DNA of 64,000 bases, taken from positions 181,647-245,646 of the IMG/VR virus record IMGVR_UViG_3300030098_004828, one strand, 5' to 3'. The notes under the pieces are model-generated. The model made no database searches, was not told where the DNA came from, and worked only from the letters and a program-made list of their open reading frames with translations. Below, piece after piece: positions 29,305-60,998 of this stretch. Within the stretch, counting starts at the first letter, position 1; each line of letters opens with the position of its first letter. Both the position numbers and the translations under genes were made by a program.

Positions 29305-29312
29305 TATATTTG
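29305..29312 (+). promoter_or_regulatory. Bacteroidota -7 promoter element TATATTTG, 3 nt before ATG 29316
   Basis: Exact TAnnTTTG match in a 16-bp intergenic gap. Confidence 0.5.
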
Positions 29313-29315
29313 CAT

Positions 29316-37692: not shown

Positions 37693-38040
37693 ATGGGAAT
37701 AAATAAAACAAATGTACCTGGATCTTTTGAGAAACAGGTTATTGCTACTGACAAAACTACTAAAGCAGTTAGAAGAGGTCTGGGTGATTATGGTGCCAAG
37801 TTTGTTGGTGATGATGCTGTACATGTAGGTAAATGGTATGCTATTCAAGGTCTTCAATCAGCCGTTCTGGATGTTTCAGATTGTGAATTTAATGGTGTGG
37901 CTGGAAATTTAACTTCTGGTGATCAAGTAGATGTTAGTGCAGGAGATATAAAAATACCTGATGGTTGTACTATATTTCTTAATGCTAATAAACTATCATT
38001 AGTAACCGGAGGACACGCAATCTTTTATAGAAGACCTTAA
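37693..38040 (+). CDS. Small beta-rich putative virion protein (115 aa)
   Basis: GKWYAIQGLQSAV and IPDGCTIF patterns like small phage structural proteins. Late operon. Confidence 0.45.
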   Translation: MGINKTNVPGSFEKQVIATDKTTKAVRRGLGDYGAKFVGDDAVHVGKWYAIQGLQSAVLDVSDCEFNGVAGNLTSGDQVDVSAGDIKIPDGCTIFLNANKLSLVTGGHAIFYRRP

Positions 38041-38981: not shown

Positions 38982-39290
38982 ATGGAGTACTACATCTTTA
39001 CAGTTATAATTACAGCACTAACAGTATTGTTTAGTACAGAGGCATGGAGGTATTATAAATCTAAATTAGATATTAACTACAATAAAGAATCTATGGCAGC
39101 TAAAAAAGAAAGAGAGTATACAAATAGTCTTGTAGAAAGAGTATGTAAGCTTGAAGATCTTTTGGGAGAAAGCTCTGCAGAAAAAGATTTTTTAAGAGAG
39201 AAAGTATTAGCATTAACAGAAGAGGTAGCAGGTTTAAGAGAAAGAGTTAAGTTTCTTGAAGCTGAAAATGAACGTTTAAAATTATTATAG
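38982..39290 (+). CDS. Single-TM coiled-coil membrane protein (holin/spanin-like candidate)
   Basis: Hydrophobic N-terminus (YYIFTVIITALTVLF) followed by a heptad-like C-terminus. Confidence 0.45.
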   Translation: MEYYIFTVIITALTVLFSTEAWRYYKSKLDINYNKESMAAKKEREYTNSLVERVCKLEDLLGESSAEKDFLREKVLALTEEVAGLRERVKFLEAENERLKLL

Positions 39291-39294: not shown

Positions 39295-39534
39295 ATGAAT
39301 AACGAAATAGAAAAATACAATCAGAAAGAAAGAGCTGTTGCTAAAGCAACAAAAAATAATATGTTATTAAAAGCTGCTTTAATATTACAAAGCGAAAACA
39401 GTGAGTTAAAAGTTCAAAATGAATTACTTCAAACTAAAGTTAATAGAGGAAATTTAATTGCCGATGCTAGAAAAGTTAGCAATGTTAAAGCAAATCAAAG
39501 GAAAACACCCACACGTTATGGTGGATCAAGATAA
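39295..39534 (+). CDS. Small coiled-coil basic protein ending RYGGSR
   Basis: ORF track; tightly packed in the operon. Confidence 0.55.
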   Translation: MNNEIEKYNQKERAVAKATKNNMLLKAALILQSENSELKVQNELLQTKVNRGNLIADARKVSNVKANQRKTPTRYGGSR

Positions 39535-39539: not shown

Positions 39540-39824
39540 ATGGCAAAAGAATTAAATGAAGACACAGGTTTTAAGGTAAGTATAAAAACACTTATAGGAA
39601 TAGGGGTTGCAATGGCTACAGTTATTGGTATGTGGTTTGCACTTCAAGCAGACATTGAAGAAGCTAAAATGCTTCCAGAACCACCAGCACCAGATGTAAC
39701 AAGAATGGAGTTTGATATGAAGGATAAAAATATACGTCTCACTATTGAGAATACTCAAGATGATGTGACAGAAATTAAAGAAGATTTAAGACGTATAGAA
39801 GACAAAATTGATGATTTAAAATGA
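39540..39824 (+). CDS. Single-TM coiled-coil membrane protein
   Basis: TM segment IKTLIGIGVAMATVIGMWFALQ, then a Pro linker and coiled coil. Confidence 0.55.
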   Translation: MAKELNEDTGFKVSIKTLIGIGVAMATVIGMWFALQADIEEAKMLPEPPAPDVTRMEFDMKDKNIRLTIENTQDDVTEIKEDLRRIEDKIDDLK

Positions 39825-40144
39825 AAAACCTAACATATATATTTTTACTATTTGCAGCTACAGTTAGTGCTCAAATAGAAGTTGTTCAATATAATGCGGG
39901 ATGGAATTCTAGCAATGATGTTGAATGGGTAGAAGAACTTACAGATTGTGAAATAAATTATATTGATATAGCTGCTAAGCCAAAACAGCAAGCAAAAAAT
40001 AAAATAGAAGTAGTTCCTACTATCATAATATTTGATGAAGGTGAGGAAATAGAAAGATTTCAAGCAGATATATCTTTTAGCATAAAAGCAACAAGAGAAG
40101 AAATACAAGAAATAATAGATGAATTAATTGTAAATAAATTTTAA
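39821..40144 (+). CDS. Exported thioredoxin-fold protein lacking CxxC
   Basis: Sec signal (..AATVSA|Q), then VVQYNAGWN (replacing the WCxxC position) and IEVVPTIIIFDEGEEIERF (cis-Pro strand). Confidence 0.65.
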   Translation: MKNLTYIFLLFAATVSAQIEVVQYNAGWNSSNDVEWVEELTDCEINYIDIAAKPKQQAKNKIEVVPTIIIFDEGEEIERFQADISFSIKATREEIQEIIDELIVNKF

Positions 40145-40283: not shown

Positions 40284-40754
40284 ATGGCTTCAATAAAGAC
40301 AACTTTTTCTATTATTGGTACAGGTGCCTCTTCAACAAATCCAATTAGCATTACACCACAAGCTGCTACAATTACTGTAACAGATCCTGAAGAAACAGGA
40401 ACATTAGATGTTAGTGCAACTGGAGTTTCTGGAGATGAACAGATTATAATTAATCCTACTGCTTCAGATAGTACAGCAATGGGTGCAACTGCTGCTGGTT
40501 CTTGGGTTTACTTAAGAAACGGTGCTACAACTGGTTCATCTTTACTAAAGGTTCAAGCTTACTTAAAAGCAGCTGAGCAAGCAGGTGGAGCAGCAGCTAT
40601 GTGGGTTACAATATGTTCACTTAAACCAGGTGAATTTATGTGGTATAGCCCAGTTAATGTTACTGATGGTGGAACAGATATAAAAAGAGGTTGTAAGGTA
40701 GTTAATTCAACTGCTACTGCGACAACTTGTGAATTCGCAAGGTTTAATAGATAA
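40284..40754 (+). CDS. Small beta-rich putative virion protein, paralog 1
   Basis: WVYLRN..SLKPGEFMWY motif shared with 40773 and 45968. Confidence 0.55.
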   Translation: MASIKTTFSIIGTGASSTNPISITPQAATITVTDPEETGTLDVSATGVSGDEQIIINPTASDSTAMGATAAGSWVYLRNGATTGSSLLKVQAYLKAAEQAGGAAAMWVTICSLKPGEFMWYSPVNVTDGGTDIKRGCKVVNSTATATTCEFARFNR

Positions 40755-40772: not shown

Positions 40773-41153
40773 ATGGCAAATTTAATATGTACATTTACCG
40801 CTCAAGAAACAAGTCTGGGACCTGATAAAGTAACTATTAGTGAGTTAAATAAAAGTTTTGTTGTAGAAACTCCTACTATTTCAGCTGGTGCTACCGTTGC
40901 TGCAGGTGTAACTAAAACAATTTTTACTGCTCCAACTAAGGATGCTTATATGTTCCTTAAAATGACAGGTGATAGTGGAGACACCGGTTGTGTTGTTGAT
41001 GTTAATGCTCAGCCCGCTGCTACATTAAGACATAATGATTTTTGTTTTTTCAGAGTTCCTGGTGGTTTAGCAGTAACTGTTGAAAATAAAGCAGGATCTA
41101 CTTCTACTATTGAGTGGTCAACTTGGGAATGTGAGACTCAAGTAGCACGATAA
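40773..41153 (+). CDS. Small beta-rich putative virion protein, paralog 2
   Basis: AYMFLKMTG..TLRHNDFCFFRVP. Confidence 0.55.
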   Translation: MANLICTFTAQETSLGPDKVTISELNKSFVVETPTISAGATVAAGVTKTIFTAPTKDAYMFLKMTGDSGDTGCVVDVNAQPAATLRHNDFCFFRVPGGLAVTVENKAGSTSTIEWSTWECETQVAR

Positions 41154-41165
41154 TACTAATCTACA

Positions 41166-44100
41166 ATGAAGTCCTTTATAAGACATAGTCTAATATGGAT
41201 TGTGTTATTCCTGTGTTCTACAGTGAATGCTCAATCCATAGACTCTTGGATAGAGATAGAATTTCAATTTGATAATTATGCAGAAGAAGTATCATGGAGT
41301 TTATATAATTCCACTGATACTATTTCTATTGATACAGGTTTTTACACAGCAGGTCAACCTAATGCATATGAATTTATAGAATTAGATTCAGGAGATTATA
41401 CATTTCAATTAATGGATTCATGGGGTGATGGTTTATCATGGCCTCAAGATGGTTATTGTTTAATATCCAACGAGTGTCAAGATACTCTATTTTATGCATC
41501 AGGTAATTATGGTTTAGGTTTAATTGAATCTCTTACAATTGCTCCATGTGCTCCTCCAGAGCCTGCAGTAATTGATTGTATGGATGAAAACGCAACAAAT
41601 TATAATTCAGATGCTGATGTAAATGATCAGTCTTTATGTGAATATCCACCATGTGAAGGTTGGGGTGAACCTTTTGTAGATCAGATATGTGATGGTGGTC
41701 AAGCACTTCTTTATTGGAATTGGGAAGCTTCAGATAATCCTAATTGCAATGTAATTCAAATAACTTATAGCGGTGAAAATACTAACTCTTATAACTTTGA
41801 TGTTAATATAGACAATGGTATATGGGGTGTTTATACTGGCAATGGTCAGATGCCTCCTAATTGGGAAGAAGAATATTCATTCCAAGCAATGTTTGCTGAT
41901 AGTACTATGTCAGATACTTTAACGTATACACCATATCCGTGTACACAAGGATGTACAAATGATGATGCTCCTAATTATAATCCATGGGCTACAGTAGACG
42001 ATGGGTCATGTGGAGGTCAAGCATGTGATGTAGGATATACTTCTATAACAATAGATATAACTTTAGATAATTGGCCAAGTGAAACAGGTTGGTCATTAAT
42101 TAGTGGTGGTGTAATAGATGAACACATTGATGGAGATTATAATTATCAAGATATAGGTCAAACATTTTCATATTCTTACTGTGTAATGGAAGCCGGATTT
42201 GAATTTATTATATCAGATACATATGGTGATGGTTTAGCTGGTTCAACTACAGGCGGAGATCTGGATGGAGATGTTCTTATTAGAGGTTGTAATGGAGATA
42301 CAATAACTCAATTATCTAACGGTAATTGGTTAAACGCAGCTCAAGAAAATGTAGGTGTTGGTTTTGGTAGTGTAGCATATTCAGGATGGCAACAAGCTAT
42401 TATATGTGAAACAAATGATGTTGCAGGATGTACTAATCCAATATATCAAGAATTTAATCCAGAAGCTGTTATAGATGACGGCTCATGTGTTACAGAACAT
42501 ATATATGGTTGTATAAATGAAAATGCATTTAACTATGATGAAAATGCAACAGCAATGGATATATATCCTAACTGTAATTATGAACTGTGGATAGGAGATG
42601 CAGCTGCTGATGGTTGGGGTAATTCATTCTTAGGAGTTGTACAAGGTGACAATCAATGGACATTTACAATGGGTCCAGGAGAATATGAACAAACTTTTCC
42701 TATTTGGTTAGAGACAGATAAACCTGTAAAAATATTTTACTTTGAGGTAGGTGGAGCACAAACTCCTCCAGAAGAAGTGGCTTTTCAAACACTACATAAT
42801 TCGTTTAAATTAACTAATGCTGATGATGTTATATTAATGTATGAAGGATGGAATCCTTTTGCAAACAATGGTCAAGGTGCACTTCAAGCTTTTGAACCTC
42901 CATTCTTTCAAACATATCAAGCAATGCCTTTCTGTGGTACACTTTGTATCCCTACAGTGGAAGGTTGTTTAGATGCTACAGCACTAAACTATAATGAAGA
43001 AGCTAATACAGATGACGGTAGTTGTATAGAGATTATAGAAGGTTGTACTAATGAATTAGCTTTTAACTATGATGAAGAAGCTAACTATGATGACGGGTCA
43101 TGTGAAGCTGTAGTTGTTGGATGCATGGATGAGATAGCATGGAACTACAATGAGGATGCTAATACAGATGGTGGTGATTGTATATACTTAGGTTGTACTG
43201 ATTCTTCAGCATGTAATTTTAATCCAAATGCAAATGCAGATAGTGGAGGGTGTACTTATGCTGATCAGTATTATAACTGCAGTGATGTATGTATAAATGA
43301 TGCTGACTCAGATGGAATTTGTGATGAACTTGAAATACTAGGATGTACTAGTGTAGCTGCTATTAACTATATGCCGGAAGCAACTGATGATGATGGTAGT
43401 TGTGTTGGTATAGTATATGGCTGTACAGACCCTACTGCTTTTAATTATGACGCTACAGCTAATACAGACAATGGTTCATGTGTGCCTGTAATATACGGGT
43501 GTATAGATAGTACAGCATTTAACTATGATCCAGCTGCTAATACAGATAATGGAACTTGTGTAGAATTTGTATACGGTTGTACTGATACTACAGCTCTTAA
43601 CTTTGATCCATTAGCAAATACATTAGATAACTCTTGTTGTTATCTTGGAGGATGTATGGATTCTACTGCATTAAACTATGATGAAGATGCTTGTTTTGAT
43701 GATGGTAGTTGTATAGTTATAATAGAAGGATGTGCAGATCCTAATGCATACAACTATAATCCGCTAGTTAATTTACCAGACAATAGTACGTGTCTTTATG
43801 ATGCAGGTTGTTATAGTGGACCTGGTGAACCTTATTGGTTAAATGATCCTTGCTATGCTTGGGTTATAGATATAGATAGTTATTGTTGTACAGAAATTTG
43901 GGATGAGACTTGTCAGTCTATGTATAACTATTGTGAAGATGGCTGGCCTGTTGATTTAGATGAATTATCAGGTAGTGATATAATTGTATACCCTAATCCT
44001 ACAGCAAATACATTTACTATAGAAACAAGATTAGATATTGATGTAGAACTATATAATATAGTAGGAGAACTTATAGAAACAGATAATATTAAAAGAATAG

Positions 44101-44186
44101 ATATATCAGATTATCCTGATGGAATATATAATTTGATTATTACATATGATAAAATAAGAATAACAAAAAAAATAATTAAACTATGA
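41166..44186 (+). CDS. T9SS (Por) type-A cargo protein with about 14 GCxDxxAxNY..DGSC repeats
   Basis: Signal peptide (..STVNA|Q). C-terminal IIVYPNP..VELYNIVGELI..IDISDYPDGIYNLII..TKKIIKL (43980-44186) is a canonical T9SS type A CTD. Confidence 0.88.
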   Translation: MKSFIRHSLIWIVLFLCSTVNAQSIDSWIEIEFQFDNYAEEVSWSLYNSTDTISIDTGFYTAGQPNAYEFIELDSGDYTFQLMDSWGDGLSWPQDGYCLISNECQDTLFYASGNYGLGLIESLTIAPCAPPEPAVIDCMDENATNYNSDADVNDQSLCEYPPCEGWGEPFVDQICDGGQALLYWNWEASDNPNCNVIQITYSGENTNSYNFDVNIDNGIWGVYTGNGQMPPNWEEEYSFQAMFADSTMSDTLTYTPYPCTQGCTNDDAPNYNPWATVDDGSCGGQACDVGYTSITIDITLDNWPSETGWSLISGGVIDEHIDGDYNYQDIGQTFSYSYCVMEAGFEFIISDTYGDGLAGSTTGGDLDGDVLIRGCNGDTITQLSNGNWLNAAQENVGVGFGSVAYSGWQQAIICETNDVAGCTNPIYQEFNPEAVIDDGSCVTEHIYGCINENAFNYDENATAMDIYPNCNYELWIGDAAADGWGNSFLGVVQGDNQWTFTMGPGEYEQTFPIWLETDKPVKIFYFEVGGAQTPPEEVAFQTLHNSFKLTNADDVILMYEGWNPFANNGQGALQAFEPPFFQTYQAMPFCGTLCIPTVEGCLDATALNYNEEANTDDGSCIEIIEGCTNELAFNYDEEANYDDGSCEAVVVGCMDEIAWNYNEDANTDGGDCIYLGCTDSSACNFNPNANADSGGCTYADQYYNCSDVCINDADSDGICDELEILGCTSVAAINYMPEATDDDGSCVGIVYGCTDPTAFNYDATANTDNGSCVPVIYGCIDSTAFNYDPAANTDNGTCVEFVYGCTDTTALNFDPLANTLDNSCCYLGGCMDSTALNYDEDACFDDGSCIVIIEGCADPNAYNYNPLVNLPDNSTCLYDAGCYSGPGEPYWLNDPCYAWVIDIDSYCCTEIWDETCQSMYNYCEDGWPVDLDELSGSDIIVYPNPTANTFTIETRLDIDVELYNIVGELIETDNIKRIDISDYPDGIYNLIITYDKIRITKKIIKL
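42960..43800 (+). repeat. Coding tandem array of about 27-aa Cys/Asp/Asn repeats (GC[TM]D..A.NY...A..DDGSC)
   Basis: Ten copies in this interval, four more upstream in the same ORF. Divergent at DNA level. Confidence 0.85.
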
Positions 44187-44374
44187 AATATTTAGCAGCA
44201 TTGTGGGTTTTAGTAATTGTAGGTTGCGGATTATTTAATCCTGCAAAATATAATCCTAATCCAAGACCAGTAGTAGAAGAGTGTTGTGCTAAAGATTCAA
44301 TAAGAATTGATACAATAAGATTAACAAATGGTGTTGATCATATTATTATGTTAGATACAGTAAAAATTAAATAA
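44183..44374 (+). CDS. Small lipoprotein (63 aa)
   Basis: MK, hydrophobic core, lipobox IVG|C at residue 15. Overlaps the T9SS gene stop (ATGA). Confidence 0.65.
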   Translation: MKYLAALWVLVIVGCGLFNPAKYNPNPRPVVEECCAKDSIRIDTIRLTNGVDHIIMLDTVKIK

Positions 44375-44385
44375 AATTTAAAATT

Positions 44386-44637
44386 ATGCCACAAGGAAAA
44401 GGAACTTATGGGTCTCAAGTAGGTAGACCAAGAAAAACACAAAAAGGAGGTGCTTCTTGTTCATTAAAAGTTAAAGGTGTAAACATTTGTTCATTAACCA
44501 AAAGACAACAAACTTCATTGCAAAAACATGCAGAACATCATACTAAAAAACATATTCAAGCTATGGTAAACGCAATGAACAATGGTGCTAGTTTTACTCA
44601 ATCACATAAAGATGCAATGCAAAAAGTAGGAAAATGA
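44386..44637 (+). CDS. Small basic protein: MPQGKGTYGSQVGRP module fused via QKGG to a LTKRQ..KHAEHH..KH module
   Basis: Both halves resemble recurrent small basic proteins of aquatic phages. Confidence 0.6.
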   Translation: MPQGKGTYGSQVGRPRKTQKGGASCSLKVKGVNICSLTKRQQTSLQKHAEHHTKKHIQAMVNAMNNGASFTQSHKDAMQKVGK

Positions 44638-45692
44638 GAATAATTTTATACATATTATTACTTTTATCATTTACGATAAATGCACAAGAAGAAAGTAAAT
44701 TTAAAAAAGAACTTAAAAAAACTTTTAAATTTTCTACATTCTATGCTGCAGTAAATGGTGGTACTTCTATTTCAGATCAAAATGTATATTCTGTATTAGA
44801 TCAACTTCAAACCGATGTAATAGAAACTCCATTTGATTACGCACTAACTCTAGGTGTAAGAAAGATACAAAGATTTGGATACGAAAACAAGGCTAACACA
44901 TTCAAAGACGGTACAGAAACTTCATACTCTGATGCCGCTACAATAGGACGAACTAAAGGATTTGAGTTTTTATTTGAGATGGATTACCAAAGAAGATTTG
45001 GTGATACATATATAGATCAGAATCACTTTCTACGATACTTAGCAGATAAATGGGTTGTTAAGGTGGAGTATTTACAAGATGGCTTTGCTGATGTAGAATA
45101 CATGGAAGCATCACAACGATATAGACAAAAGATAGGTAAGAGATTTTCACTTACTGCAGGGACAGCACAAAGGATCTCCGAACCTTATGGATTTGATCCG
45201 TTAGCTCAGTGGTTGTTATCCAACGGGAACTTACACTACACAAACCTTGCTTTAGAGGAAGGCTACTCAATTGGTTTTGCACCAACAGGAATAGAATACT
45301 TAGACCCTAGTGGAGCGGTCGTGGCTACAAGCAGTGAAGTTTGGGAAGAGGTGGTAATACCGCAAATGCTTGATGACTATGTTAAAGCAAGTAAAGATGC
45401 ATTACCAGTACAATGGTGTCACTCTTTAGTAATTGGCTTTGACTATTATTACTATACAAAAAAGATCTGGTTACACTCATGGGGTAATGTGCTTCCTGTT
45501 CATCTTAACACAGGAGGAGAATACTCATATCACAATTTTAATAATGGTAATTGGATAGATTATTCTGGTGGTTTAATATTTGGATATAAGATCAATAAGA
45601 ACTTAGGTATCTTTGTTGAGGGTAAATATAACAAATATTGGAATAGAAACTGGCATGATTTCAAGTTTGGAATAAATTATATTATTCTTTAG
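44634..45692 (+). CDS. Outer-membrane beta-barrel protein, Bacteroidota type (352 aa)
   Basis: Sec signal (..FTINA|Q), alternating aromatic strands and a terminal strand WHDFKFGINYIIL. Confidence 0.7.
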   Translation: MRIILYILLLLSFTINAQEESKFKKELKKTFKFSTFYAAVNGGTSISDQNVYSVLDQLQTDVIETPFDYALTLGVRKIQRFGYENKANTFKDGTETSYSDAATIGRTKGFEFLFEMDYQRRFGDTYIDQNHFLRYLADKWVVKVEYLQDGFADVEYMEASQRYRQKIGKRFSLTAGTAQRISEPYGFDPLAQWLLSNGNLHYTNLALEEGYSIGFAPTGIEYLDPSGAVVATSSEVWEEVVIPQMLDDYVKASKDALPVQWCHSLVIGFDYYYYTKKIWLHSWGNVLPVHLNTGGEYSYHNFNNGNWIDYSGGLIFGYKINKNLGIFVEGKYNKYWNRNWHDFKFGINYIIL

Positions 45693-45706
45693 ATTTTCCT
45701 ATTTTT

Positions 45707-45718
45707 TTTGTATATTAT
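45707..45718 (+). promoter_or_regulatory. Putative late promoter TTTGTATATTAT
   Basis: Intergenic copy of the repeated motif. Confidence 0.55.
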
Positions 45719-45741
45719 TATATAACCAAAACCGTAAACAT

Positions 45742-45891
45742 ATGAACTGGATAAACAGTTGGCGTGAAGGTAACAAAAAGAATATTGTTGATTTCACAGT
45801 AAGATTTGGGGTATTTACCCTATTTGAATTAAAATGGAACCCTGGTGTAAACTTTAGGTTCTTAATATTAAACTTTGGATTTGAAATATAA
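45742..45891 (+). CDS. 49-aa protein MNWINSWREGNKKNIVDFTVRFGVFTLFELKWNPGVNFRFLILNFGFEI
   Basis: Hand translation; downstream of the promoter motif; amphipathic beta pattern. Confidence 0.6.
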   Translation: MNWINSWREGNKKNIVDFTVRFGVFTLFELKWNPGVNFRFLILNFGFEI

Positions 45892-45962
45892 TGTGTCCTT
45901 GTCCAATATGTATAATAGCAGCAGTTTTTGCTGTTGTTACAGTAAAATTAATTAAAAAGTAA
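45891..45962 (+). CDS. 23-aa membrane micro-protein MCPCPICIIAAVFAVVTVKLIKK
   Basis: TAATG-coupled to the previous ORF; CxCxxC, a TM helix and a basic tail. Confidence 0.45.
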   Translation: MCPCPICIIAAVFAVVTVKLIKK

Positions 45963-45967
45963 TATAA

Positions 45968-46330
45968 ATGGCAACATTAAACACAACAGTTAAATTAGAG
46001 ACATCTTCTTCAGTAGCAGGTGTGTTAAAATTAGATTTTACTAATACACAACCTTTTACAATTGGAGATGTTGCTGGTGATGATCTTACTGTTAATGCAT
46101 TAACTTCTCTTGTAGCAACTGGATATGGTGCTACAGCTTATGTTTATGTAGTGAATACAGCAAGTGATGCTGCACATACAATAGCATTAATGACTGATGC
46201 TGGTGTACAATGGGGTACTTTAGAAGCCGGTGAATGGGGATTTTTTGCAATTCCTAATGGAACAGGATTTAAAGTACAAGCTGATGCTGGAGTACCTGTG
46301 CTTAATTATGTTATAATGAAAAAAGCATAA
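45968..46330 (+). CDS. Small beta-rich putative virion protein, paralog 3
   Basis: AYVYVVNT..GTLEAGEWGFFAIP. Confidence 0.55.
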   Translation: MATLNTTVKLETSSSVAGVLKLDFTNTQPFTIGDVAGDDLTVNALTSLVATGYGATAYVYVVNTASDAAHTIALMTDAGVQWGTLEAGEWGFFAIPNGTGFKVQADAGVPVLNYVIMKKA

Positions 46331-46334
46331 ACCA

Positions 46335-46595
46335 ATGTTTAAAGGATTAAAAAATATAAAAGTCACTGATACGAGAACTCAGATGACTTTTTGTGCAAGT
46401 TGTAAAACTTGTCCAGCTATAGATATCTCAACTGAATCTGACAAAGTAATTGTTGGAGGTGATGATGAAGGATATACTGAATTTACAAAAGATCAATTTG
46501 CTCTTTTTGTAAAGACAGTTAAAGCTGGAACTTATGATAAATATTTACCAGAAGAAGGAGCAGATCTTAATGAGGACGTTCCTTTTGGAGACTAA
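46335..46595 (+). CDS. Small protein with DUF397-like pattern
   Basis: CASCKTCPAIDI..VIVG..EFTKDQFALFVKTVKAGTYD resembles the C..V..VRD..F..W..F..VK.G pattern. Confidence 0.35.
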   Translation: MFKGLKNIKVTDTRTQMTFCASCKTCPAIDISTESDKVIVGGDDEGYTEFTKDQFALFVKTVKAGTYDKYLPEEGADLNEDVPFGD

Positions 46596-46612
46596 TTTAA
46601 AAATAAAAAGTT

Positions 46613-47257
46613 ATGCCACAATTAGGAAATAAAAAATATTCATATGACGCAGATGGAATGCGTGAATATATAAAAGATAAAAATGCTATATCTAAAGCTA
46701 TGTATGGTAGATCTCATTTTCCAATAGATGAAGCTAAAAATGGTGGTGATGATAAGAAATATAAAAAAGGTGATGATATTTTAGAGCACCTTAATATACA
46801 TAGTTCAGATAGAACAGATAAAGGTGGTAAACCTGGTGATATAGATGGGGACGGTATTCCTGAAAACTATGTAGATAGTGATAAAAGAAAAGGTAATTTA
46901 AAACAAACTGGTTGGAGAAGATATCTAGATAAAAATGCTGGTGTTGATTTAGAATTACTTGCAGATGATTTAAAAACAGGAAACTATAAAGGTAAAAGAG
47001 AGGGTCATAAATCTGCTCTTGATAAATATTTTGGATTTTTTAATAAGCAGACAGCAAAGGTGTTTAATGCAATAGATAAAATGCAAAATAAACCTCCAAA
47101 ATATTCTAATGAAGAAATAGAAAACATGACTGGTGGTCTTTCAGGAGAAGGTTTAGGAAGACAGTTTTTAAGTAATGGTGGCCGAGTCAAAGGAATAAAT
47201 GGTGCAAAAAATATGAACGTTCCTGGAATGATAAAGGGAACGTTTAACGGTAAATAG
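46613..47257 (+). CDS. Basic protein with C-terminal PGMIKG tag
   Basis: Ends LSNGG-RVKG..VPGMIKGTFNGK; internal DIDGDGIPE loop. Confidence 0.7.
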   Translation: MPQLGNKKYSYDADGMREYIKDKNAISKAMYGRSHFPIDEAKNGGDDKKYKKGDDILEHLNIHSSDRTDKGGKPGDIDGDGIPENYVDSDKRKGNLKQTGWRRYLDKNAGVDLELLADDLKTGNYKGKREGHKSALDKYFGFFNKQTAKVFNAIDKMQNKPPKYSNEEIENMTGGLSGEGLGRQFLSNGGRVKGINGAKNMNVPGMIKGTFNGK

Positions 47258-47286
47258 TAATTAATTAATTTTAAAAATAAATAGTC

Positions 47287-48513
47287 ATGGCAAATGGTGT
47301 AACAAAAATGAGTAAAACAGACGATAAATCTAAAAAAAAGAAAACTAGATTTACAGGTCAAGGTAATAAAGGTGGAAAAGGTAAATTTAAAACTACTAAA
47401 GAATCTGGACAACAAGGTATAAATAAAGCAGGGTTTTTAGGACCTTTAAATCCTTTTAGAAAGAAAATTAAAAATGAAGACGGTTCAACAACTACTTATA
47501 ACAGAATTACCGGTAAGAAAATAAAAACAAAAGGTAAAGATGCAGATGGTAATACTTATAAAATAAAGTATAAAGGTAAAGATGGTAATATATCTAAGAT
47601 CAAACAAAAAGATTCTAAAGTAAAGTATGACAAGAAAACAGGTAATATTAGAAAAACAAAAGTTACTGTTAGAGATGAAGATGGTAAAAGAACTGGTACT
47701 GAAAAAAATAAATTTGATAAAGACGGAAATCTTAAAAAATACAAAAAAACAAGAGGAATTTTTAAAAGATCTGAAAAAATTAAGTTTAAAAAAGATGATG
47801 AAACTGGTGCTAATATAATCAGAAAACAAAAAAATGTTAAAGCTAAAACAGGTCCAGGAGGTCAAATGACTGGTGATTTAGAAAGCTCTCCGGGTTACAA
47901 GTATAAAGTTAAAAAGAAAGGTGACGGTATACAAGTAAAAGAAAAAGGTGTTGATGTAGAAACTGGATGGGGTACTACTAAAAAAGGTACTAAGAAAACA
48001 CGATATGATGCTGATGGCAATCAAATAAGTGTTAAGACTAGACCAGGTGGTCTTCATACATCTACAACAAAAAAAGGTGATGGAAGTAAGTTTGAACCTA
48101 AAGGAAACTTTAGTGATGTACAATCACCTGAGACTCAAACTGAAACTCAAACTGAGACTCAGAATCAAACTGATACAAACACTGATACAAATACAAATAC
48201 TGATACAAATACAGATACTAAAAAAGACTCTACTTATGGAAGTAAGCGAGCTGAATATGCTGGTCAAAATATATCAGATGCACAGTTTGTTGAAAAAGAT
48301 GGTAAGAAAAATCTTAGATCTTATAAAGAAGTTTGGAAGACTGATAAAGCTACTAGAGATAAGTATGGTAACAAGTATGATGACTATGTTAAAGATGCTG
48401 AATCTTACTGGAAGAAAAAAGGACTTAGTAGAGGTGGTGAAAGACGTTTAGGCGGGGCTATAACAGGTCAAGCTAGATATGGTGGATCTATGGGACCACA
48501 AGGTATATTATAA
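47287..48513 (+). CDS. Very Lys-rich beta-hairpin repeat protein with C-terminal GPQGIL tag (408 aa)
   Basis: Repeated K.K.D.DG hairpins, a Thr-x spacer and a YKE.W..DYV..AE module; ends ARYGG-SMGPQGIL. Confidence 0.7.
   Translation: MANGVTKMSKTDDKSKKKKTRFTGQGNKGGKGKFKTTKESGQQGINKAGFLGPLNPFRKKIKNEDGSTTTYNRITGKKIKTKGKDADGNTYKIKYKGKDGNISKIKQKDSKVKYDKKTGNIRKTKVTVRDEDGKRTGTEKNKFDKDGNLKKYKKTRGIFKRSEKIKFKKDDETGANIIRKQKNVKAKTGPGGQMTGDLESSPGYKYKVKKKGDGIQVKEKGVDVETGWGTTKKGTKKTRYDADGNQISVKTRPGGLHTSTTKKGDGSKFEPKGNFSDVQSPETQTETQTETQNQTDTNTDTNTNTDTNTDTKKDSTYGSKRAEYAGQNISDAQFVEKDGKKNLRSYKEVWKTDKATRDKYGNKYDDYVKDAESYWKKKGLSRGGERRLGGAITGQARYGGSMGPQGIL
48130..48219 (+). repeat. Coding low-complexity repeat ETQTETQTETQNQTDTNTDTNTNTDTNTDT
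   Basis: Imperfect 6/12-nt tandem units (actgaaactcaa / actgatacaaat). Confidence 0.85.
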
Positions 48514-48698
48514 TGGTTGGTGTTTTACTAGCACGTTTATTGGGGAAGCCTTACATAAAAAGTCAGGTTCCCCCTCCTACAAAATATCAAGCTCCTGTGG
48601 GGCGAGATAATTACCTAGGAATAGGTACTATGAAAATAAAAAAGGGTGGTAGTATATGTAGATCTGGTTGTGCTGTAGGACCTAATAATGTTTTATAA
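48513..48698 (+). CDS. 61-aa protein with C-terminal GPNNVL tag
   Basis: Ends IKKGG-SICRSGCAVGPNNVL; TAATG-coupled to the previous gene. Confidence 0.65.
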   Translation: MVGVLLARLLGKPYIKSQVPPPTKYQAPVGRDNYLGIGTMKIKKGGSICRSGCAVGPNNVL

Positions 48699-48699
48699 T

Positions 48700-49080
48700 A
48701 TGGATGAGAAAAAATTACAAATGTATATGAAGATGATCCTGCAAGGGAACATTCCTTTTGCTCCACCTAAAAGTCCTGAATGGGAGATGGCTGAAAAGAC
48801 AATCTTTAAACAACAGGAAGGTGAAAAGAAAAATTTAGATCTAAAACTTGATACAGAACAGCTTACTAATAAAGCAGATTCTTTATTTAAAGTAGTGACA
48901 AATGAATTAAAAAAGATTAATATTGATAATGGCGGGTGTTTTCCTGGTAAAATAGATATTAAAGATGGTACAAGGTTTCCTGGAGGATGTTTTCCAAGTA
49001 CTAAAAGTACAAAACCTTTAGGCGGCATAATTATAGCCAAAAAAAGAGGAGGCGCAGTAGGGCGCAATGGGGTTTTATAA
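48700..49080 (+). CDS. 126-aa protein with C-terminal GRNGVL tag
   Basis: Ends KPLGG-IIIAKKRGG-AVGRNGVL; two GGCFP repeats. ATG 48700 is preferred over the track's 48688. Confidence 0.65.
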   Translation: MDEKKLQMYMKMILQGNIPFAPPKSPEWEMAEKTIFKQQEGEKKNLDLKLDTEQLTNKADSLFKVVTNELKKINIDNGGCFPGKIDIKDGTRFPGGCFPSTKSTKPLGGIIIAKKRGGAVGRNGVL

Positions 49081-49095
49081 ACTAAAAATTAAAAT

Positions 49096-49497
49096 ATGGG
49101 AGTATTAAATAAATTATTCTCTGGAGGAGCTAGTAAACTAGTTGAATCAGTAGGTGGTGTTATAGATAATTTAGTGACGACAGATGAGGAAAAGCTTGAT
49201 GCAAAGAGAAAGCTAAAAGAACTAATCATGAACCATGAGGTTCAGATGGAAAAAAATATAACTGACCGTTGGACTGCAGATATGAATTCTGACAGTTGGT
49301 TAAGTAAAAATGTAAGACCTATGGTCCTCATTTTTTTAATTGTTTGTACTATGATATTAATCTTTATTGATGCTGGTACAATTAAATTTGAAGTAGAAGA
49401 AAAATGGACAGATTTATTACAGTTAGTACTGATCACTGTAATAGGTGCTTATTTTGGAGGAAGATCAGTAGAAAAGTTTAATAAAAAAAAGAAATAG
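49096..49497 (+). CDS. Holin, 3TM (GTA-holin/DUF3154-like)
   Basis: IDNLVTTDEEK..DSWLSKNVRP..TM..GAYFGGRS.EK is the family signature. Confidence 0.85.
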   Translation: MGVLNKLFSGGASKLVESVGGVIDNLVTTDEEKLDAKRKLKELIMNHEVQMEKNITDRWTADMNSDSWLSKNVRPMVLIFLIVCTMILIFIDAGTIKFEVEEKWTDLLQLVLITVIGAYFGGRSVEKFNKKKK

Positions 49498-49499
49498 TT

Positions 49500-49970
49500 A
49501 TGCCTAATAATTTAAAAAAAGCTGGTATTAAATATAAAAAAGGTAAAGAAGTTTATAATAATGGCGGTGGTAATCCAAATATTCAACCTACAGCTACAGA
49601 TACATTACAAGCTTATATGCATCAAGTAGTACCAGGCTCTGTTTCAGGACAAGTAGATAATCTTAAGTCAGGTTTAATGGATGATGCTAAAAAATCACAT
49701 GATTTAACAGGTGATATGACTTATCAAGATTTTAAGGATGCTGCAGACCGTTTGGGTCTTAACACTAGAACAGATGTAATGAAGCATTTAACAGGTAAAA
49801 CTCCAGATGATTTACATTGGACTAAAAGGGGTTTACTCAAAAGTATAGTTGACATGGATAAAAGTTTAAGAACAGGTGGTGCTACACCAGGTAGTCCTGT
49901 ATATGCAGCTAAAAATAGTACTTATAAAGGTGGACCAGCACCTGGAATGATTAATGGAACTTTTAAATAA
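49500..49970 (+). CDS. Basic protein with C-terminal PGMING tag
   Basis: Ends STYKGG-PAPGMINGTFK. Confidence 0.7.
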   Translation: MPNNLKKAGIKYKKGKEVYNNGGGNPNIQPTATDTLQAYMHQVVPGSVSGQVDNLKSGLMDDAKKSHDLTGDMTYQDFKDAADRLGLNTRTDVMKHLTGKTPDDLHWTKRGLLKSIVDMDKSLRTGGATPGSPVYAAKNSTYKGGPAPGMINGTFK

Positions 49971-49978
49971 TATATACC

Positions 49979-50338
49979 ATGGATGAAGAACAAATAAAAA
50001 TGCTCCAAGAGCTACATAATAAAAAAACAGAAGATAAGTTTAAGGATCCAGATGGTAACATGGGAAATTCTGGAACTTTACGAGAAAGATTAGATTCAAT
50101 TTCTAACAGTGCAGATGTAAACAAAGCAGATGAATGGTGGAAAAAAATACAGCATGGAAATGACGATCCTAAAGGTCCAGGAAATTTAAAAGATGATCAT
50201 GGTGATATGTATGACAAATCAAAAATTAAAACTAATCCTGCTTTAGATTATCTTTTAAAAAATAAAGAGTCTGTTGAAGGAGTTGGTGGATGGAAAGGTA
50301 AATCAGTTCCTGGTATGATAAAAGGAAGACATAAATAA
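49979..50338 (+). CDS. Protein with C-terminal PGMIKG tag
   Basis: Ends EGVGG-WKGKSVPGMIKGRHK. Confidence 0.7.
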   Translation: MDEEQIKMLQELHNKKTEDKFKDPDGNMGNSGTLRERLDSISNSADVNKADEWWKKIQHGNDDPKGPGNLKDDHGDMYDKSKIKTNPALDYLLKNKESVEGVGGWKGKSVPGMIKGRHK

Positions 50339-50463
50339 TGGCAAAAGGAAATACATTTACTTTTAGAGGTAGTCACAGTAAAAAAAGACGTGGTGTTCAT
50401 TCTAAGAATGCTAGCAGGTCTCAAAATGCATATAAAAAAGTATATAGAGGACAAGGAAGATAA
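50338..50463 (+). CDS. 41-aa basic protein MAKGNTFTFRGSHSKKRRGVHSKNASRSQNAYKKVYRGQGR
   Basis: Hand translation; TAATG-coupled. The ..G.HSK..KK.YRGQGR ending is recurrent in aquatic phages. Confidence 0.7.
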   Translation: MAKGNTFTFRGSHSKKRRGVHSKNASRSQNAYKKVYRGQGR

Positions 50464-50497
50464 AAAAAGAGGAGACTATTGATCTCCTCTTTCTTTT
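50464..50497. terminator. Bidirectional intrinsic terminator at the convergence of the late and replication arms
   Basis: Stem AAAGAGGAGA (50466-50475) / TCTCCTCTTT (50483-50492), 7-nt loop, A-run to the left and T-rich to the right. Confidence 0.8.
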
Positions 50498-59839: not shown

Positions 59840-60998
59840 TTATTTCATTGTCATTTTGATGATTTCTGGATTCATCATCATCTTGTTAAACTTAGTTTTA
59901 TTACCGTTGAAAATAGTTCTAACAATAAGATATTTCAGATCATTAGCAAATACATCTTTAGTACATAATGCTATCAATCTTTCATTTATCTTTGGTGTTA
60001 CAGTATTTTCATTAGCATAAACAACTGAATAGTTAGCTAACCTTGTTGCAAGAGTAGATGCAATATCTGCTCTATATGTGTCACCTTTTCCTAGAACACT
60101 ATTTAATNNNNNNNNNNGAACCTTCACCAATCATTTGGATCATACTCAAGTCATCTTCAAACTTTTCAAAACTTGAAATAGAATTGAAGAATGCTGTGAT
60201 GGATCTTGCATTTGTTTCTTTATTTACTAACTCAGGATGCAGTAATAAGAAGTTAATACAACGAGTGTCAATATGCTGTTCTTCAGCCCATCTTGCCCAT
60301 ACGTTTGCATCAAACTTTAGGTTAGCAGTAATATATCTAGTCTTTTGTGCTGAGTCAATACTATTAACCATATAGTCACCATTATCTGGATTACTGGTTA
60401 GTATAATATGCCAATCAGCCGGTAAAGACCAAGATATATATTGTTGTCTGTCAACCAATTCCATTACAGCTTGAATAAATCTAACATCTGCTCTGTTCCA
60501 GTCGTCAAGAAGAAGTATACCTCCTTTCTTTTTATCAGCAATCCATTCTGGTGCACAATAAGACATTCTATTCTTACCGGTCATCTTCCATCCTTTTCTT
60601 AAATACTCTTCAACTGCAAGTTCATCAACCCATTGACCAATCTTCTTAGTCATAGTAGAGTCTGCAACTTGTGCAGATGCTGCAGCTTTCTGAGCTACTG
60701 TATATTGAAGGTCATCAATCTTCTTAGGGACTTGTTTTTCTCTAAACATTTGAAATTGTCTAACAGGAAAACCTACTAAATCACCTAATTCTTCTATCTG
60801 AGCTAAATTAAGCTTAACAAAATCTAATTCATTTTCTTTAGCTAGATCTAGTACAGCAGATGTTTTACCAATACCTGATTCACCAACTACTTCTACAGCA
60901 ACTGGATTTTTCCCTTGCTCTTGTAAGAATCTATTATTCTTTATTATATGGTTTACAAAACCGTTTAATTCATCTATATTTAAATTTACTTGTGCCAT
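59840..60998 (-). CDS. MoxR-like AAA+ ATPase, interrupted by a scaffold gap
   Basis: Walker A GESGIGKT, Walker B LLLDDWNR, ILTSNP, DSAQKTR. The two track ORFs (60099-60998 and 59840-60130) flank the N run. Confidence 0.85.
60108..60117. other. Assembly gap (10 N)
   Basis: Seen directly; true length unknown. Confidence 0.99.

What the first reader, a model, noticed from the sequence alone, without database searches (positions are those of the whole stretch)
44183..45692. Lipoprotein plus outer-membrane beta-barrel next to the T9SS cargo: a possible surface-remodelling module
Three envelope-targeted genes are consecutive: T9SS cargo, a 63-aa lipoprotein (lipobox IVG|C, ATGA-coupled) and a 352-aa beta-barrel, with one small basic gene between the last two. 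The barrel gene is compositionally foreign: a hand count gives 80 of 180 G+C (44%) at 45181-45360 versus about 22% in a sampled 60-mer of the RNAP gene. Inference: a recently acquired barrel that may anchor or shuttle the cargo (PorV-like role) or alter receptors. Alternative: the lipoprotein is an o-spanin.
Basis: partly seen in the sequence, partly recalled or inferred. Interest (0 to 1): 0.65.

Follow-up and report, generated by a model that had tools for sequence, protein, structure and literature searches.

The report
Phage outer-membrane barrel in envelope module
An uncultured marine phage of Bacteroidota carries an old, conserved gene for a new kind of outer-membrane barrel protein that always travels with a secreted (type IX) cargo protein, a small inner-membrane coiled-coil protein and a periplasmic thioredoxin-like protein, beside the lysis genes; it is not a recently acquired foreign gene.

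Summary
The ORFs, both ATGA overlaps, the lipobox and the 44.4% G+C count are real. The inference of a foreign gene is not: the barrel gene is 33.8% G+C against 30.6% for the window, and in 66 relatives it is no richer than its surroundings.

The 352-aa protein has a signal peptide and models as a roughly 12-stranded outer-membrane beta-barrel (pLDDT 76). It belongs to a family with no Pfam, PHROG or NCBIfam model. The family was found on phage contigs and on seven short or oddly binned MAG contigs, not in any isolate genome. It is not PorV/FadL-like and not PorP/SprF-like.

Among 103 related loci it sits with the T9SS type-A CTD cargo (C) in 80.
- S (39540-39824): one transmembrane helix plus a coiled coil.
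- T (39821-40144): a secreted thioredoxin fold without CxxC.

Gene orders are CBST, BSTC or STCB. Distant relatives keep B-S-T. Endolysins of two types or a holin often flank the module. The 63-aa lipoprotein and the 83-aa basic gene are clade-restricted fillers of a variable slot.

Best reading (about 0.4): the barrel is the outer-membrane member of a late envelope module that carries or anchors the phage's T9SS cargo. Main rival: a spanin-like S-T-B lysis device.

The parts
39540..39824 (+). S: 94-aa bitopic membrane protein. It has a short N-terminus, one transmembrane helix, a Pro-rich linker (LPEPPAPD) and a C-terminal coiled coil. The charge distribution predicts N-in/C-out, which is an i-spanin-like architecture. 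It is a conserved partner of the barrel.
   Evidence: ORF. Found in 84 of 103 loci. It directly follows the barrel (median gap 9 bp) in the CBST, BSTC and BST orders. It is about 75% identical across subclades, more conserved than the barrel. No PHROG, PADLOC or deposited-phage match. At least 7999 unnamed relatives.
39821..40144 (+). T: 107-aa secreted thioredoxin-fold protein without the CxxC active site. It is ATGA-coupled to S.
   Evidence: Signal peptide ending in AQ. Pfam Thioredoxin E 7e-4, below the cut-off. CxxC is present in 0 of 73 distinct family members, while the cis-Pro VPT motif is kept. It follows S with a median gap of 5 bp in 80 loci.
41166..44186 (+). C: 1006-aa T9SS substrate. 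It has a Sec signal peptide, a Cys-rich passenger (54 Cys) with repeated C..A.NY..A..DDGSC modules, and a type A C-terminal sorting domain (residues 941-1005, nt about 43986-44183).
   Evidence: PF18962 E 2.8e-10 and TIGR04183 at 36.9 bits. Repeats and Cys count. The passenger has only unnamed viral relatives. The repeat region varies in length among strains in metagenomes.
44183..44374 (+). 63-aa lipoprotein (lipobox IVG|C). The mature part is Pro-rich and carries a twin Cys. It is a clade-restricted accessory gene in a variable slot.
   Evidence: Homologues occur in 14 of 103 loci only. In the sister genome of the same record it is ATGA-coupled directly to the barrel.
44386..44637 (+). 83-aa basic soluble protein, ATGA-coupled to the barrel. 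It is a sporadic insertion and not part of the conserved module.
   Evidence: phrog_31838 (unknown function) E 4e-8. Homologues occur in 6 loci. It is absent between lipoprotein and barrel in the sister genome. The 83-84-aa genes at the same place in L001, L004 and L113 are unrelated membrane proteins.
44634..45692 (+). B: 352-aa outer-membrane beta-barrel of an unnamed phage family. It has a signal peptide (cleavage after INAQ), about 12 membrane strands, a conserved periplasmic segment 78-108, an extracellular insert 183-256 and a C-terminal NY(I/V)I(F/L) beta-signal.
   Evidence: AF2 models: pLDDT 63, then 76 with pTM 0.70. Fold matches. Alignments. N- and C-termini of 35 members. No family hit.
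45087..45441 (.). Local G+C maximum inside the barrel gene, up to 46.7% in 180 nt. It is one of eight such regions in the window.
   Evidence: There is only a mild bump (36%) at the same relative position in relatives.
49096..49497 (+). Holin, 3.4 kb downstream on the same strand. It marks the lysis neighbourhood of the module.
   Evidence: phrog_3427 holin E 1e-32. PF11351 at 24.6 bits. Homologues lie beside M15 endolysins in Vibrio phages. It is 66% identical to the holin that follows B-S-T-endolysin in L090.

Best explanation
The 352-aa gene encodes a genuine phage outer-membrane beta-barrel of a family that has no name. It is exported by Sec, presumably inserted by the host BAM machinery, and has about 12 strands. 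It is an old core gene of an abundant, uncultured clade of roughly 100-125 kb marine phages. Their host must be a Bacteroidota with a type IX secretion system.

It works inside a conserved four-gene envelope module. The members are the T9SS type-A-CTD cargo (C), the barrel (B), a bitopic inner-membrane coiled-coil protein (S) and a periplasmic redox-dead thioredoxin-fold protein (T). The module lies in the same-strand gene block as the holin.

Most likely mechanism:
- During late infection the cargo is exported to the periplasm and passed through the host T9SS.
- The phage barrel serves as its dedicated outer-membrane partner, as carrier or surface anchor. This is the way gene-linked PorP/SprF barrels serve type B substrates.
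- S and T are periplasmic-side partners. They may dock on the barrel's conserved periplasmic segment 78-108.
- The infected cell surface is thereby remodelled, for example to mask receptors on cells and debris.

Shown: the fold class, the export signals, the family distribution, the gene linkage and the lysis-gene neighbourhood.

Inferred: insertion by BAM, any physical contact between B and C, S or T, the surface location of C, and the physiological purpose.
For: - Barrel fold with signal peptide and C-terminal beta-signal in all 30 or so full-length members, including those at 23-40% identity.
- The cargo carries a bona fide type A CTD.
- C lies within about 2.7 kb of B in 80 of 103 loci. 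It is directly upstream with a median gap of -1 bp in 45. The pair stays together through three different gene orders: CBST 37, BSTC 17, STCB 16.
- All four products have export or membrane signals, so together they cover inner membrane, periplasm, outer membrane and cell surface.
- The segment 78-108 of B is among the most conserved in sequence, yet is modelled with low confidence. This fits a partner-binding element.
- Precedent: T9SS substrates form complexes with outer-membrane carrier barrels, and type B substrates are often gene-linked to their cognate PorP/SprF shuttle (PMC12618676, PMC9143113, PMC12635249).
- The family occurs on phage contigs only. It gave 400 representatives at E <= 1e-3 in 1.84 billion proteins, viral-only Atlas clusters, and a BFVD viral hit at E 5e-24.
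Against: - Type A CTD substrates are all handled by host PorV, so they need no private barrel (PMC12618676).
- B is not homologous to PorV or PorP/SprF and lacks a periplasmic C-tail.
- The CTD (about 45% identity across subclades) is less conserved than B (about 65%) and S (about 75%). This does not suggest a tight B-CTD interface.
- Distant relatives keep B-S-T without a detectable CTD protein within about 4 kb (L090), although most such contigs are short.
- B stays intact where C is split (L004) or has a degenerate CTD (L095).
- All loci come from one phage clade, so part of the linkage is shared synteny rather than independent evidence.
Confidence: 0.4

Rival explanations
1. Spanin-like lysis device. 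S (inner-membrane anchor with a periplasmic coiled coil), T (periplasmic adaptor) and B (outer-membrane anchor) form a trans-envelope complex. After holin and endolysin have acted, the complex disrupts the outer membrane. A beta-barrel would take the place of the usual o-spanin lipoprotein. The small lipoproteins (the 63-aa one here, a 105-aa one in other subclades) would be accessory or alternative outer-membrane partners.
For: - B-S-T is the most deeply conserved linkage. It is kept in relatives with 29-33% identical barrels (L090, L113-L115).
- S has i-spanin architecture.
- Endolysins of two unrelated types sit at the module's border. M15 endolysins do so in L090 (B S T x E H), L076 (E S T C B) and L077 (B S T C E). 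PG_binding_1 + Amidase_2 endolysins do so in 13 loci, 8 of them directly after T.
- Lysis genes are the commonest annotated downstream neighbour: 8 amidase endolysins, 1-2 M15 peptidases and 2 holins among the 57 distinct neighbours.
- A holin lies 2-4.5 kb downstream in 33 loci, including the window.
- Two unrelated Pro- and Cys-rich lipoprotein families appear in the same module.
- No classical spanin was recognised.
Against: - No known spanin uses a beta-barrel.
- The periplasmic part of S is only about 58 residues.
- B and S are far more conserved than spanins usually are.
- This reading does not explain why a 1000-aa T9SS substrate is translationally coupled to B in 45 loci.
- No PHROG lysis family matches S, T, B or the lipoproteins.
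- No endolysin was found next to the module in the window's own genome.
Confidence: 0.25
2. B acts on its own as a surface-conversion or superinfection-exclusion protein. This is how lambda Lom binds LamB, or how other phage outer-membrane proteins may change the receptor landscape. Its neighbours would be unrelated late genes.
For: - Phage-encoded outer-membrane barrels are widespread: 1,603 in 1,303 huge phages. The authors of that survey propose receptor interference, citing Lom-LamB (preprint 10.64898/2026.10.24.761521).
- B has a 75-residue extracellular insert (183-256).
- B persists where C is broken.
Against: - The tight, rearrangement-resistant linkage with S and T, with gaps of 5-9 bp, argues for a multi-protein function.
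- No PADLOC model matches.
- B is highly conserved, whereas proteins in receptor arms races usually diverge fast.
Confidence: 0.15
3. B is a solute channel: an auxiliary porin of the 12-stranded KdgM/NanC/Tsx type. It would raise uptake of an anionic sugar or of nucleosides during infection.
For: - Best fold matches include KdgM (Z 13.1, rmsd 4.1 A, 164 aligned residues), NanC (Z 12.6) and Tsx (Z 11.7, rmsd 3.9 A).
- Many conserved Arg/Lys residues lie in the strands: R76, K77, R120, R134, R162, R180.
- Ribonucleotide reductase genes lie a few kb upstream in several relatives.
Against: - The same Z range is reached by autotransporter domains, LpxR, OMPLA and FapF, so the match is to the fold class only.
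- No KdgM or Tsx family hit.
- A porin has no need of S, T or a T9SS substrate.
Confidence: 0.1
4. One reading: a recently acquired, compositionally foreign barrel with a PorV-like role, forming a three-gene unit with the lipoprotein.
For: - The local 44-47% G+C peak and the GC3 of 0.252 are real.
- The cargo and the barrel are linked.
Against: - Composition is ordinary at gene scale and in 66 relatives.
- The family is phage-wide, with no cellular donor detected.
- It is not PorV/FadL-like.
- The lipoprotein occurs in 14 of 103 loci only.
Confidence: 0.03

Closest known systems
PorP/SprF-like T9SS carrier barrels with their gene-linked type B CTD substrates (Flavobacterium johnsoniae SprB/SprF; PMC12618676, PMC9143113, PMC12635249)
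   Same: A large T9SS substrate gene lies immediately next to, and is often translationally coupled with, a gene for an outer-membrane barrel of about 310-350 aa with a signal peptide. The host is a Bacteroidota. This is the closest functional analogy: a private carrier or anchor for one cargo.
   Different: - The cargo here has a type A, not a type B, CTD.
- B gives no PF11751 match in 35 members.
- B was not hit when the two MAGs holding phage contigs were searched with PF11751.
- hhalign probability is 15% over 21 columns.
- B ends at its last strand, without the Cys-X-Cys periplasmic tail that links SprF to GldK.
- B is encoded by a phage.
PorV (LptO), the FadL-like shuttle for type A CTD substrates
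   Different: - PorV is a 14-stranded FadL-type barrel.
- B's best matches are 12-stranded barrels, and neither PorV nor FadL is in the top 50 of 48,161 chains.
- No NCBIfam or Pfam PorV/FadL hit.
Two-component spanins (lambda Rz/Rz1; PMC6139136)
   Same: - S has i-spanin architecture: an N-terminal transmembrane helix and a periplasmic coiled coil.
- The 63-aa protein has o-spanin features: lipobox, small size, Pro-rich, periplasmic Cys.
- Holin and endolysin genes flank the module in relatives.
   Different: - S and the lipoprotein genes are neither embedded, overlapped nor adjacent here. They lie 4.4 kb apart.
- The lipoprotein is absent from most relatives that keep S.
- The universal outer-membrane partner would be a beta-barrel, which no known spanin has.
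12-stranded outer-membrane barrels: KdgM/NanC porins, Tsx, and autotransporter beta-domains (EstA, NalP)
   Same: Fold class and size of the barrel: Z 11.7-13.1 over 164-190 aligned residues.
   Different: - About 10% identity and no family-model match.
- B has a 75-residue extracellular insert and a 30-residue conserved periplasmic segment that these proteins lack.
- B has no passenger domain.
Phage-encoded outer-membrane proteins (lambda Lom; the 1,603 barrels of huge phages in preprint 10.64898/2026.10.24.761521; cyanophage DUF680)
   Same: A phage gene for a Sec-exported outer-membrane beta-barrel. The IMG/VR record is nominally over 200 kb.
   Different: - That survey does not mention T9SS (0 occurrences).
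- It does not describe a module of barrel, coiled-coil protein and thioredoxin-like protein.
- B is unrelated to Lom/Ail (8 strands) and to DUF680.

Membership tests
Outer-membrane beta-barrel protein (generic class) | N-terminal Sec signal peptide | tested here: met
   All full-length members of A2, including those at 23-40% identity, start with a basic n-region and a hydrophobic core, mostly followed by an AQ or GQ cleavage motif. This was read by eye, without a signal-peptide predictor.
Outer-membrane beta-barrel protein (generic class) | Closed antiparallel barrel with an even number of strands and a C-terminal aromatic or hydrophobic beta-signal | tested here: met
   The AF2 model has pLDDT 76 and pTM 0.70. 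Among the 50 Foldseek matches listed, those with a confident alignment are membrane barrels, and the top VIA-align matches (Z up to 13.1) are membrane barrels as well. The family consensus ends in NY(V/I)I(F/L/Y).
PorV / FadL family (T9SS type A shuttle) | 14-stranded FadL-type barrel with an N-terminal hatch; match to PorV or Toluene_X models | tested here: not met
   No Pfam or NCBIfam hit at E <= 0.1-1. The best structural matches are 12-stranded barrels. PorV and FadL are not among the top 50.
PorP/SprF family (PF11751, T9SS type B carriers) | Match to the PorP_SprF model | tested here: not met
   0 of 35 members match. A PF11751 search of the two MAGs that hold phage contigs finds 12 other genes but not the barrel. 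hhalign against 10 PorP/SprF sequences gives probability 15%.
PorP/SprF family (PF11751, T9SS type B carriers) | Gene linkage to a T9SS substrate with a type B CTD | tested here: not met
   The linkage to a T9SS substrate is met. The CTD, however, is type A: TIGR04183 at 36.9 bits, with no type B hit.
PorP/SprF family (PF11751, T9SS type B carriers) | Periplasmic C-tail with Cys-X-Cys for the disulfide link to GldK (SprF subgroup; PMC12635249) | tested here: not met
   The protein ends with its last strand and the family has no conserved Cys.
T9SS type A substrate (the neighbouring 1006-aa protein) | Sec signal peptide plus a C-terminal TIGR04183 / PF18962 domain | tested here: met
o-spanin (the 63-aa lipoprotein) | Small outer-membrane lipoprotein with a lipobox, Pro-rich mature part and periplasmic Cys | tested here: met
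   Lipobox IVG|C. The mature part is 48 aa, begins GLFNPAKYNPNPRP and holds a twin Cys.
o-spanin (the 63-aa lipoprotein) | Gene embedded in, overlapping or adjacent to an i-spanin gene, within a lysis cassette | tested here: not met
   Its neighbours are the cargo and the basic gene or the barrel. The only i-spanin-like genes (38982-39290 and S at 39540-39824) are more than 4 kb upstream.
o-spanin (the 63-aa lipoprotein) | Present wherever the partner i-spanin is present | tested here: not met
   S occurs in 84 loci and the lipoprotein family in 14. Any lipobox ORF within 6 kb was found in only 26 of 103 loci.
i-spanin (protein S) | Type II inner-membrane protein with a periplasmic coiled-coil domain, encoded in the lysis cassette | tested here: inconclusive
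   The architecture fits. Endolysin or holin genes flank the module in many relatives. But the periplasmic part is only about 58 aa, no PHROG spanin family matches, and topology is inferred from charge only.
KdgM/NanC porin family | Match to the KdgM model; 12-stranded barrel of about 210-230 aa with short loops | tested here: not met
   The fold class is similar (Z 13.1 and 12.6). There is no family hit, and B has 352 aa with two long conserved insertions.

The most novel reading that the evidence does not exclude
B, S and T form a previously undescribed trans-envelope phage machine specific to Bacteroidota hosts. There are two versions:
- A spanin analogue whose outer-membrane anchor is a beta-barrel instead of a lipoprotein.
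- A phage-supplied private T9SS carrier system. It would take a type A substrate away from the host's PorV/attachment pathway and fix it on the dying cell's surface.

Either version would be the first phage-encoded component shown to work with, or in place of, the T9SS and envelope machinery of Bacteroidota.
Probability: 0.3. Interest if true: 0.8.

Novelty: new variant of a known kind. Interest (0 to 1): 0.55.

Why it matters
How phages of Bacteroidota cross and break the outer membrane, and how they use the phylum-specific type IX secretion system, is little explored. My searches found no paper on it, and no spanin was recognised in these phage genomes.

This module is carried by an abundant, globally distributed marine phage clade, with thousands of relatives in Tara and other ocean metagenomes. 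It links a T9SS substrate, a new barrel family and two periplasmic-side proteins to the lysis genes.

If the barrel is a private carrier or anchor, phages can reprogramme the surface of marine flavobacteria, which are key degraders of algal carbon. If it is a spanin substitute, it fills a gap in the lysis paradigm. Both readings can be tested with four small genes.

Tried and rejected
- **Barrel-CTD co-folding.** Complex prediction on the mature barrel (19-352) plus cargo residues 925-1006 scored 0.00 twice. The verdict was 'no answer', so it counts neither for nor against binding.
- **Family scans of the barrel.** Pfam, PHROGs, NCBIfam and PADLOC gave nothing. A Pfam scan of 35 family members gave only chance-level hits.
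- **Deposited phages.**
  - megablast of 41000-47000 gave no match.
  - tblastn of the barrel gave no match.
  - tblastn of S gave no match.
  - The cargo matched only short repeat-level stretches in cyanophage S-CAM3 and one marine virus.
- **Search for a cellular donor.** The genome-contig scan found 7 hits. All were MAG contigs labelled Parvibaculum, Nitrosopelagicus, Winogradskyella, Rickettsiales, Maricaulis or Flavobacteriales. I read these as phage contigs mis-binned into MAGs, not as host genes. The first attempt, with the diverse alignment A2, failed for lack of a conserved stretch.
- **PorP/SprF kinship.** Rejected.
- **Endolysin in the window's own genome.** tblastn with the M15 and amidase endolysins of relatives found nothing, and neither did PF13539, PF01510 or PF00959.
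- **Expression.** No RNA run holds the stretch, so transcription and co-transcription remain untested.
- **Promoter and terminator scans.** Promoter-like sites are fewer than in shuffles. The only strong terminator is the convergent one at 50462-50496.
- **Atlas searches.** The feature search gave generic outer-membrane barrel clusters below the 170-feature mark. The shape search gave viral unnamed clusters only.
- **The 'same' 83-aa gene upstream of the barrel in L001, L004 and L113.** These proved to be unrelated small membrane proteins.


Full report
**1. The observation**

- cargo, 41166-44186, 1006 aa
- lipoprotein, 44183-44374, 63 aa
- basic protein, 44386-44637, 83 aa
- barrel, 44634-45692, 352 aa

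Both ATGA overlaps are visible in the sequence: cargo/lipoprotein at 44183 and basic gene/barrel at 44634. The cargo ends in a type A T9SS sorting domain (PF18962 E 2.8e-10; TIGR04183 at 36.9 bits against a cut-off of 23). The 63-aa product has the lipobox IVG|C.

Contigs from three marine metagenome runs of two studies cover about 44091-44680 without one difference. The gene order cargo end, lipoprotein, basic gene, barrel start therefore exists in nature.

**2. Composition**

The hand count is exact: 44.4% at 45180-45359. The baseline was wrong, however.
- The window averages 30.6%. Windows of 180 nt have an sd of 4.5%, and eight regions reach 42% or more.
- The whole gene is 33.8%, a value that 16% of equally long windows match or exceed.
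- GC3 is 0.252, second of 42 genes (mean 0.156, sd 0.054). It lies in the range of the minus-strand replication genes.
- In 66 relatives the barrel gene averages 31.7% against 32.7% for the locus, and exceeds the locus in 18 of 66.

The gene is not compositionally foreign.

**3. What the barrel is**

Pfam, PHROGs, NCBIfam and PADLOC give nothing.

The word search finds 3630 unnamed relatives from ocean metagenomes. The 120 listed are 62-89% identical. Because this left the protein open, I ran the exhaustive representative search with a profile. It returned only 400 representatives at E <= 1e-3 among 1.84 billion proteins, mostly fragments and none named.

An alignment that includes members down to 23% identity gave an AF2 model with pLDDT 76 and pTM 0.70.
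- The model is a closed barrel of about 12 membrane strands, plus a hairpin at 49-63.
- Segment 78-108 is modelled with low confidence but is very conserved in sequence. Strand parity places it on the periplasmic side.
- A 75-residue helical and sheet insert at 183-256 falls on the extracellular side.

Foldseek and the Foldseek-independent VIA-align search both return membrane barrels as their best matches, led by 12-stranded ones:

| Match | Z |
|---|---|
| EstA | 13.1 |
| KdgM | 13.1 |
| NanC | 12.6 |
| LpxR | 11.9 |
| NalP | 11.8 |
| Tsx | 11.7 |

PorV and FadL are not in the top 50. The Atlas shape search returns only unnamed viral clusters. BFVD returns one unnamed viral protein at E 5e-24, followed by other phage outer-membrane proteins at far weaker scores.

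Every full-length member has a signal peptide. Most end in an aromatic or hydrophobic beta-signal.

**4. Where the family lives**

Contigs that carry it are phage contigs of about 90-125 kb. They also carry gp32, a UvsX-like RecA, DnaB and ribonucleotide reductase.

A scan of one genome for each of 185,579 prokaryote species found seven hits. All were MAG contigs with mutually inconsistent labels, one of them an archaeon, and one was a 120-kb single contig. I read these as mis-binned phage. No deposited phage has the gene.

It is therefore an old, phage-specific core gene of an uncultured clade. The type A CTD implies a Bacteroidota host. About 30% G+C and marine sources suggest Flavobacteriia, but that is an inference.

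**5. The real module**

I called ORFs in 103 related loci and searched them iteratively.

A CTD protein (C) lies beside the barrel (B) in 80 loci. It is directly upstream in 45, with a median gap of -1 bp. Most loci without one are cut by a contig end. In L095 the upstream protein is a clear cargo homologue with a shortened C-terminal domain.

- **S** is found in 84 loci and lies at window 39540-39824. It has 94 aa: a transmembrane helix, a Pro-rich linker and a coiled coil. Acidic residues after the helix predict N-in/C-out.
- **T** is found in 81 loci and lies at window 39821-40144. It has a signal peptide and a thioredoxin fold. The cis-Pro motif is kept, but CxxC occurs in 0 of 73 distinct sequences.

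| Gene order | Loci |
|---|---|
| CBST | 34 (+3 with a second T) |
| BSTC | 17 |
| STCB (the window's subclade) | 16 |
| BST, including distant relatives whose barrels are 29-33% identical (L090, L113-L115) | 9 |

The median gap from B to S is 9 bp and from S to T 5 bp.

Identity to the window's proteins across subclades:

| Component | Identity |
|---|---|
| S | about 75% |
| B | about 65% |
| T | about 53% |
| Cargo passenger | about 45% |
| Cargo CTD | about 45% |

**6. The lipoprotein and the basic gene**

The 63-aa lipoprotein family occurs in 14 loci, all in or near the window's subclade. The basic gene occurs in 6.

In the sister genome inside the same record the lipoprotein is ATGA-coupled straight to the barrel, with no basic gene between them.

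The slot just upstream of the barrel holds the cargo in 45 loci. Elsewhere it holds at least eight unrelated small genes. These include a second lipoprotein family, small membrane proteins, and coiled-coil proteins with a transmembrane helix. Only 26 of 103 loci have any lipobox ORF within 6 kb.

These two genes are accessories, not parts of the conserved unit.

**7. Lysis neighbourhood**

Window 49096-49497 is a holin (phrog_3427 E 1e-32). Its relatives sit beside M15 endolysins in Vibrio phages.

Arrangements in relatives:
- L090 reads B, S, T, a 44-aa ORF, M15 endolysin, holin.
- L076 has the M15 endolysin before S.
- L077 has it after C.
- In L055 the gene after T is a PG_binding_1 + Amidase_2 endolysin.
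- This second endolysin type occurs in 13 loci. It lies directly after T in 8, within 450 bp after T in 2, and close upstream of C in 3.

Among the 57 distinct downstream neighbours of the module, endolysins and holins are the commonest annotated class. Two non-homologous endolysins at the same border point to a lysis cassette next door.

No endolysin was recognised in the window's own genome. Apart from one weak terminator-like match at 45807-45822, the scan found no terminator on the plus strand between 39.5 and 50.3 kb. A strong convergent terminator closes the block at 50462-50496.

**8. Mechanism**

The four products cover inner membrane (S), periplasm (T), outer membrane (B) and, through the host T9SS, the cell surface (C).

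The T9SS literature gives a direct precedent for a substrate gene linked to a gene for its own outer-membrane carrier barrel. Type B substrates depend on cognate, often adjacent, PorP/SprF shuttles, whereas all type A CTDs use PorV (PMC12618676, PMC9143113). Carriers can in addition be tied to the periplasmic track (PMC12635249).

I therefore rank first that B is the phage's own outer-membrane partner of its T9SS cargo, with S and T acting on the periplasmic side.

The weaknesses are real:
- The CTD is type A.
- B is unrelated to PorV and PorP/SprF.
- The CTD is less conserved than B.
- B-S-T persists without a visible C in L090.
- The co-folding job gave no verdict.

The main rival uses the deeper B-S-T linkage, the i-spanin-like S and the lysis-gene borders. 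In it, S-T-B is a spanin-like outer-membrane disruptor with a barrel as its outer anchor.

Lesser rivals are a stand-alone exclusion protein, as proposed for phage outer-membrane proteins in general (preprint 10.64898/2026.10.24.761521), and a KdgM/Tsx-type channel.

**9. Novelty**

Phage-encoded outer-membrane barrels are now known to be common (same preprint). That survey does not mention T9SS. My literature searches found no description of a phage T9SS substrate paired with a barrel, or of the B-S-T module.

I rate it a new variant of a known kind: a new barrel family in a new, conserved four-gene context, with its function still open.

Noticed in passing
whole record G000 (window = G000:181647-245646): The 245,646-bp IMG/VR record looks like two collinear, related phage genomes of about 120-125 kb joined head to tail near position 124,780 (70-90% nucleotide identity, same gene order). 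It does not look like one jumbo genome. Each half has its own barrel gene, and the two copies are 93% identical. The only N run (241754-241763, window 60108-60117) is not at the junction.
   Followed up: partly
window 46613-50338 (and 48513-48698): Six consecutive small, basic, low-complexity proteins end in one of two recurring C-terminal motifs: G.(G/N)(I/V)L at the very end, or PGMI.G...K. The sister genome has another with ...GRNGIL. This looks like a shared processing, targeting or packaging signal. The holin sits in the middle of this set.
   Followed up: partly
window 42900-43700 (cargo repeat region): Metagenome contigs show many joints that skip or repeat 150-570 nt inside the Cys-repeat modules of the cargo. 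The number of C..A.NY..A..DDGSC modules therefore seems to vary among strains. The cargo has 54 Cys in 1006 residues.
   Followed up: partly
window 44183-44374; L001:9009-9326; L059, L060, L087: Two unrelated module lipoprotein families both carry a twin-Cys motif in a Pro-rich mature part (EECC/KDCC in one, VCCNPP/ACCKPP in the other). SprF and PorG use periplasmic Cys to bond to GldK (PMC12635249), so a link to the T9SS or gliding track is conceivable. This was not tested.
   Followed up: no
window 12920-29299, 29310-35270, 9407-12913: There are giant ORFs of 5459, 1986 and 1168 aa, preceded by four ORFs of 610-847 aa. The six of them that were scanned have no Pfam hit. The 5459-aa ORF was not scanned.
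   Followed up: partly
window 38982-39290 and 39295-39534: Just upstream of S lie a second protein with an N-terminal transmembrane helix and a coiled coil (102 aa; basic residues after the helix suggest the opposite topology to S) and a 79-aa coiled-coil basic protein.
   Followed up: no
window 40284-40754, 40773-41153, 45968-46330, 37693-38040: Small Ala/Thr/Gly-rich proteins of 115-156 aa bracket the cargo-barrel genes. They share only weak local similarity (E 0.004-0.1), start alike (MA..., MG...) and have no family hit.
   Followed up: partly
window 50462-50496: A strong bidirectional terminator (15-bp stem with T runs on both strands) lies exactly where the plus-strand late block meets the minus-strand block. 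That block holds dUTPase, a spore-photoproduct-lyase-like radical SAM protein, DUF932, a family B DNA polymerase-like protein and a PD-(D/E)XK nuclease.
   Followed up: partly
L113:291-1569, L114: In a distant relative's contig, a HATPase_c protein and a response-regulator receiver protein lie just upstream of the small membrane gene and the barrel. This would be a two-component-like pair on a putative phage contig.
   Followed up: no
L011, L013, L037 versus the window: The module is mosaic. Some loci have a barrel 89% identical to the window's but S at 69-72% and T at 43-44%. Others have a barrel at 89%, S at 97% and T at 91%. This indicates recombination between module genes.
   Followed up: no
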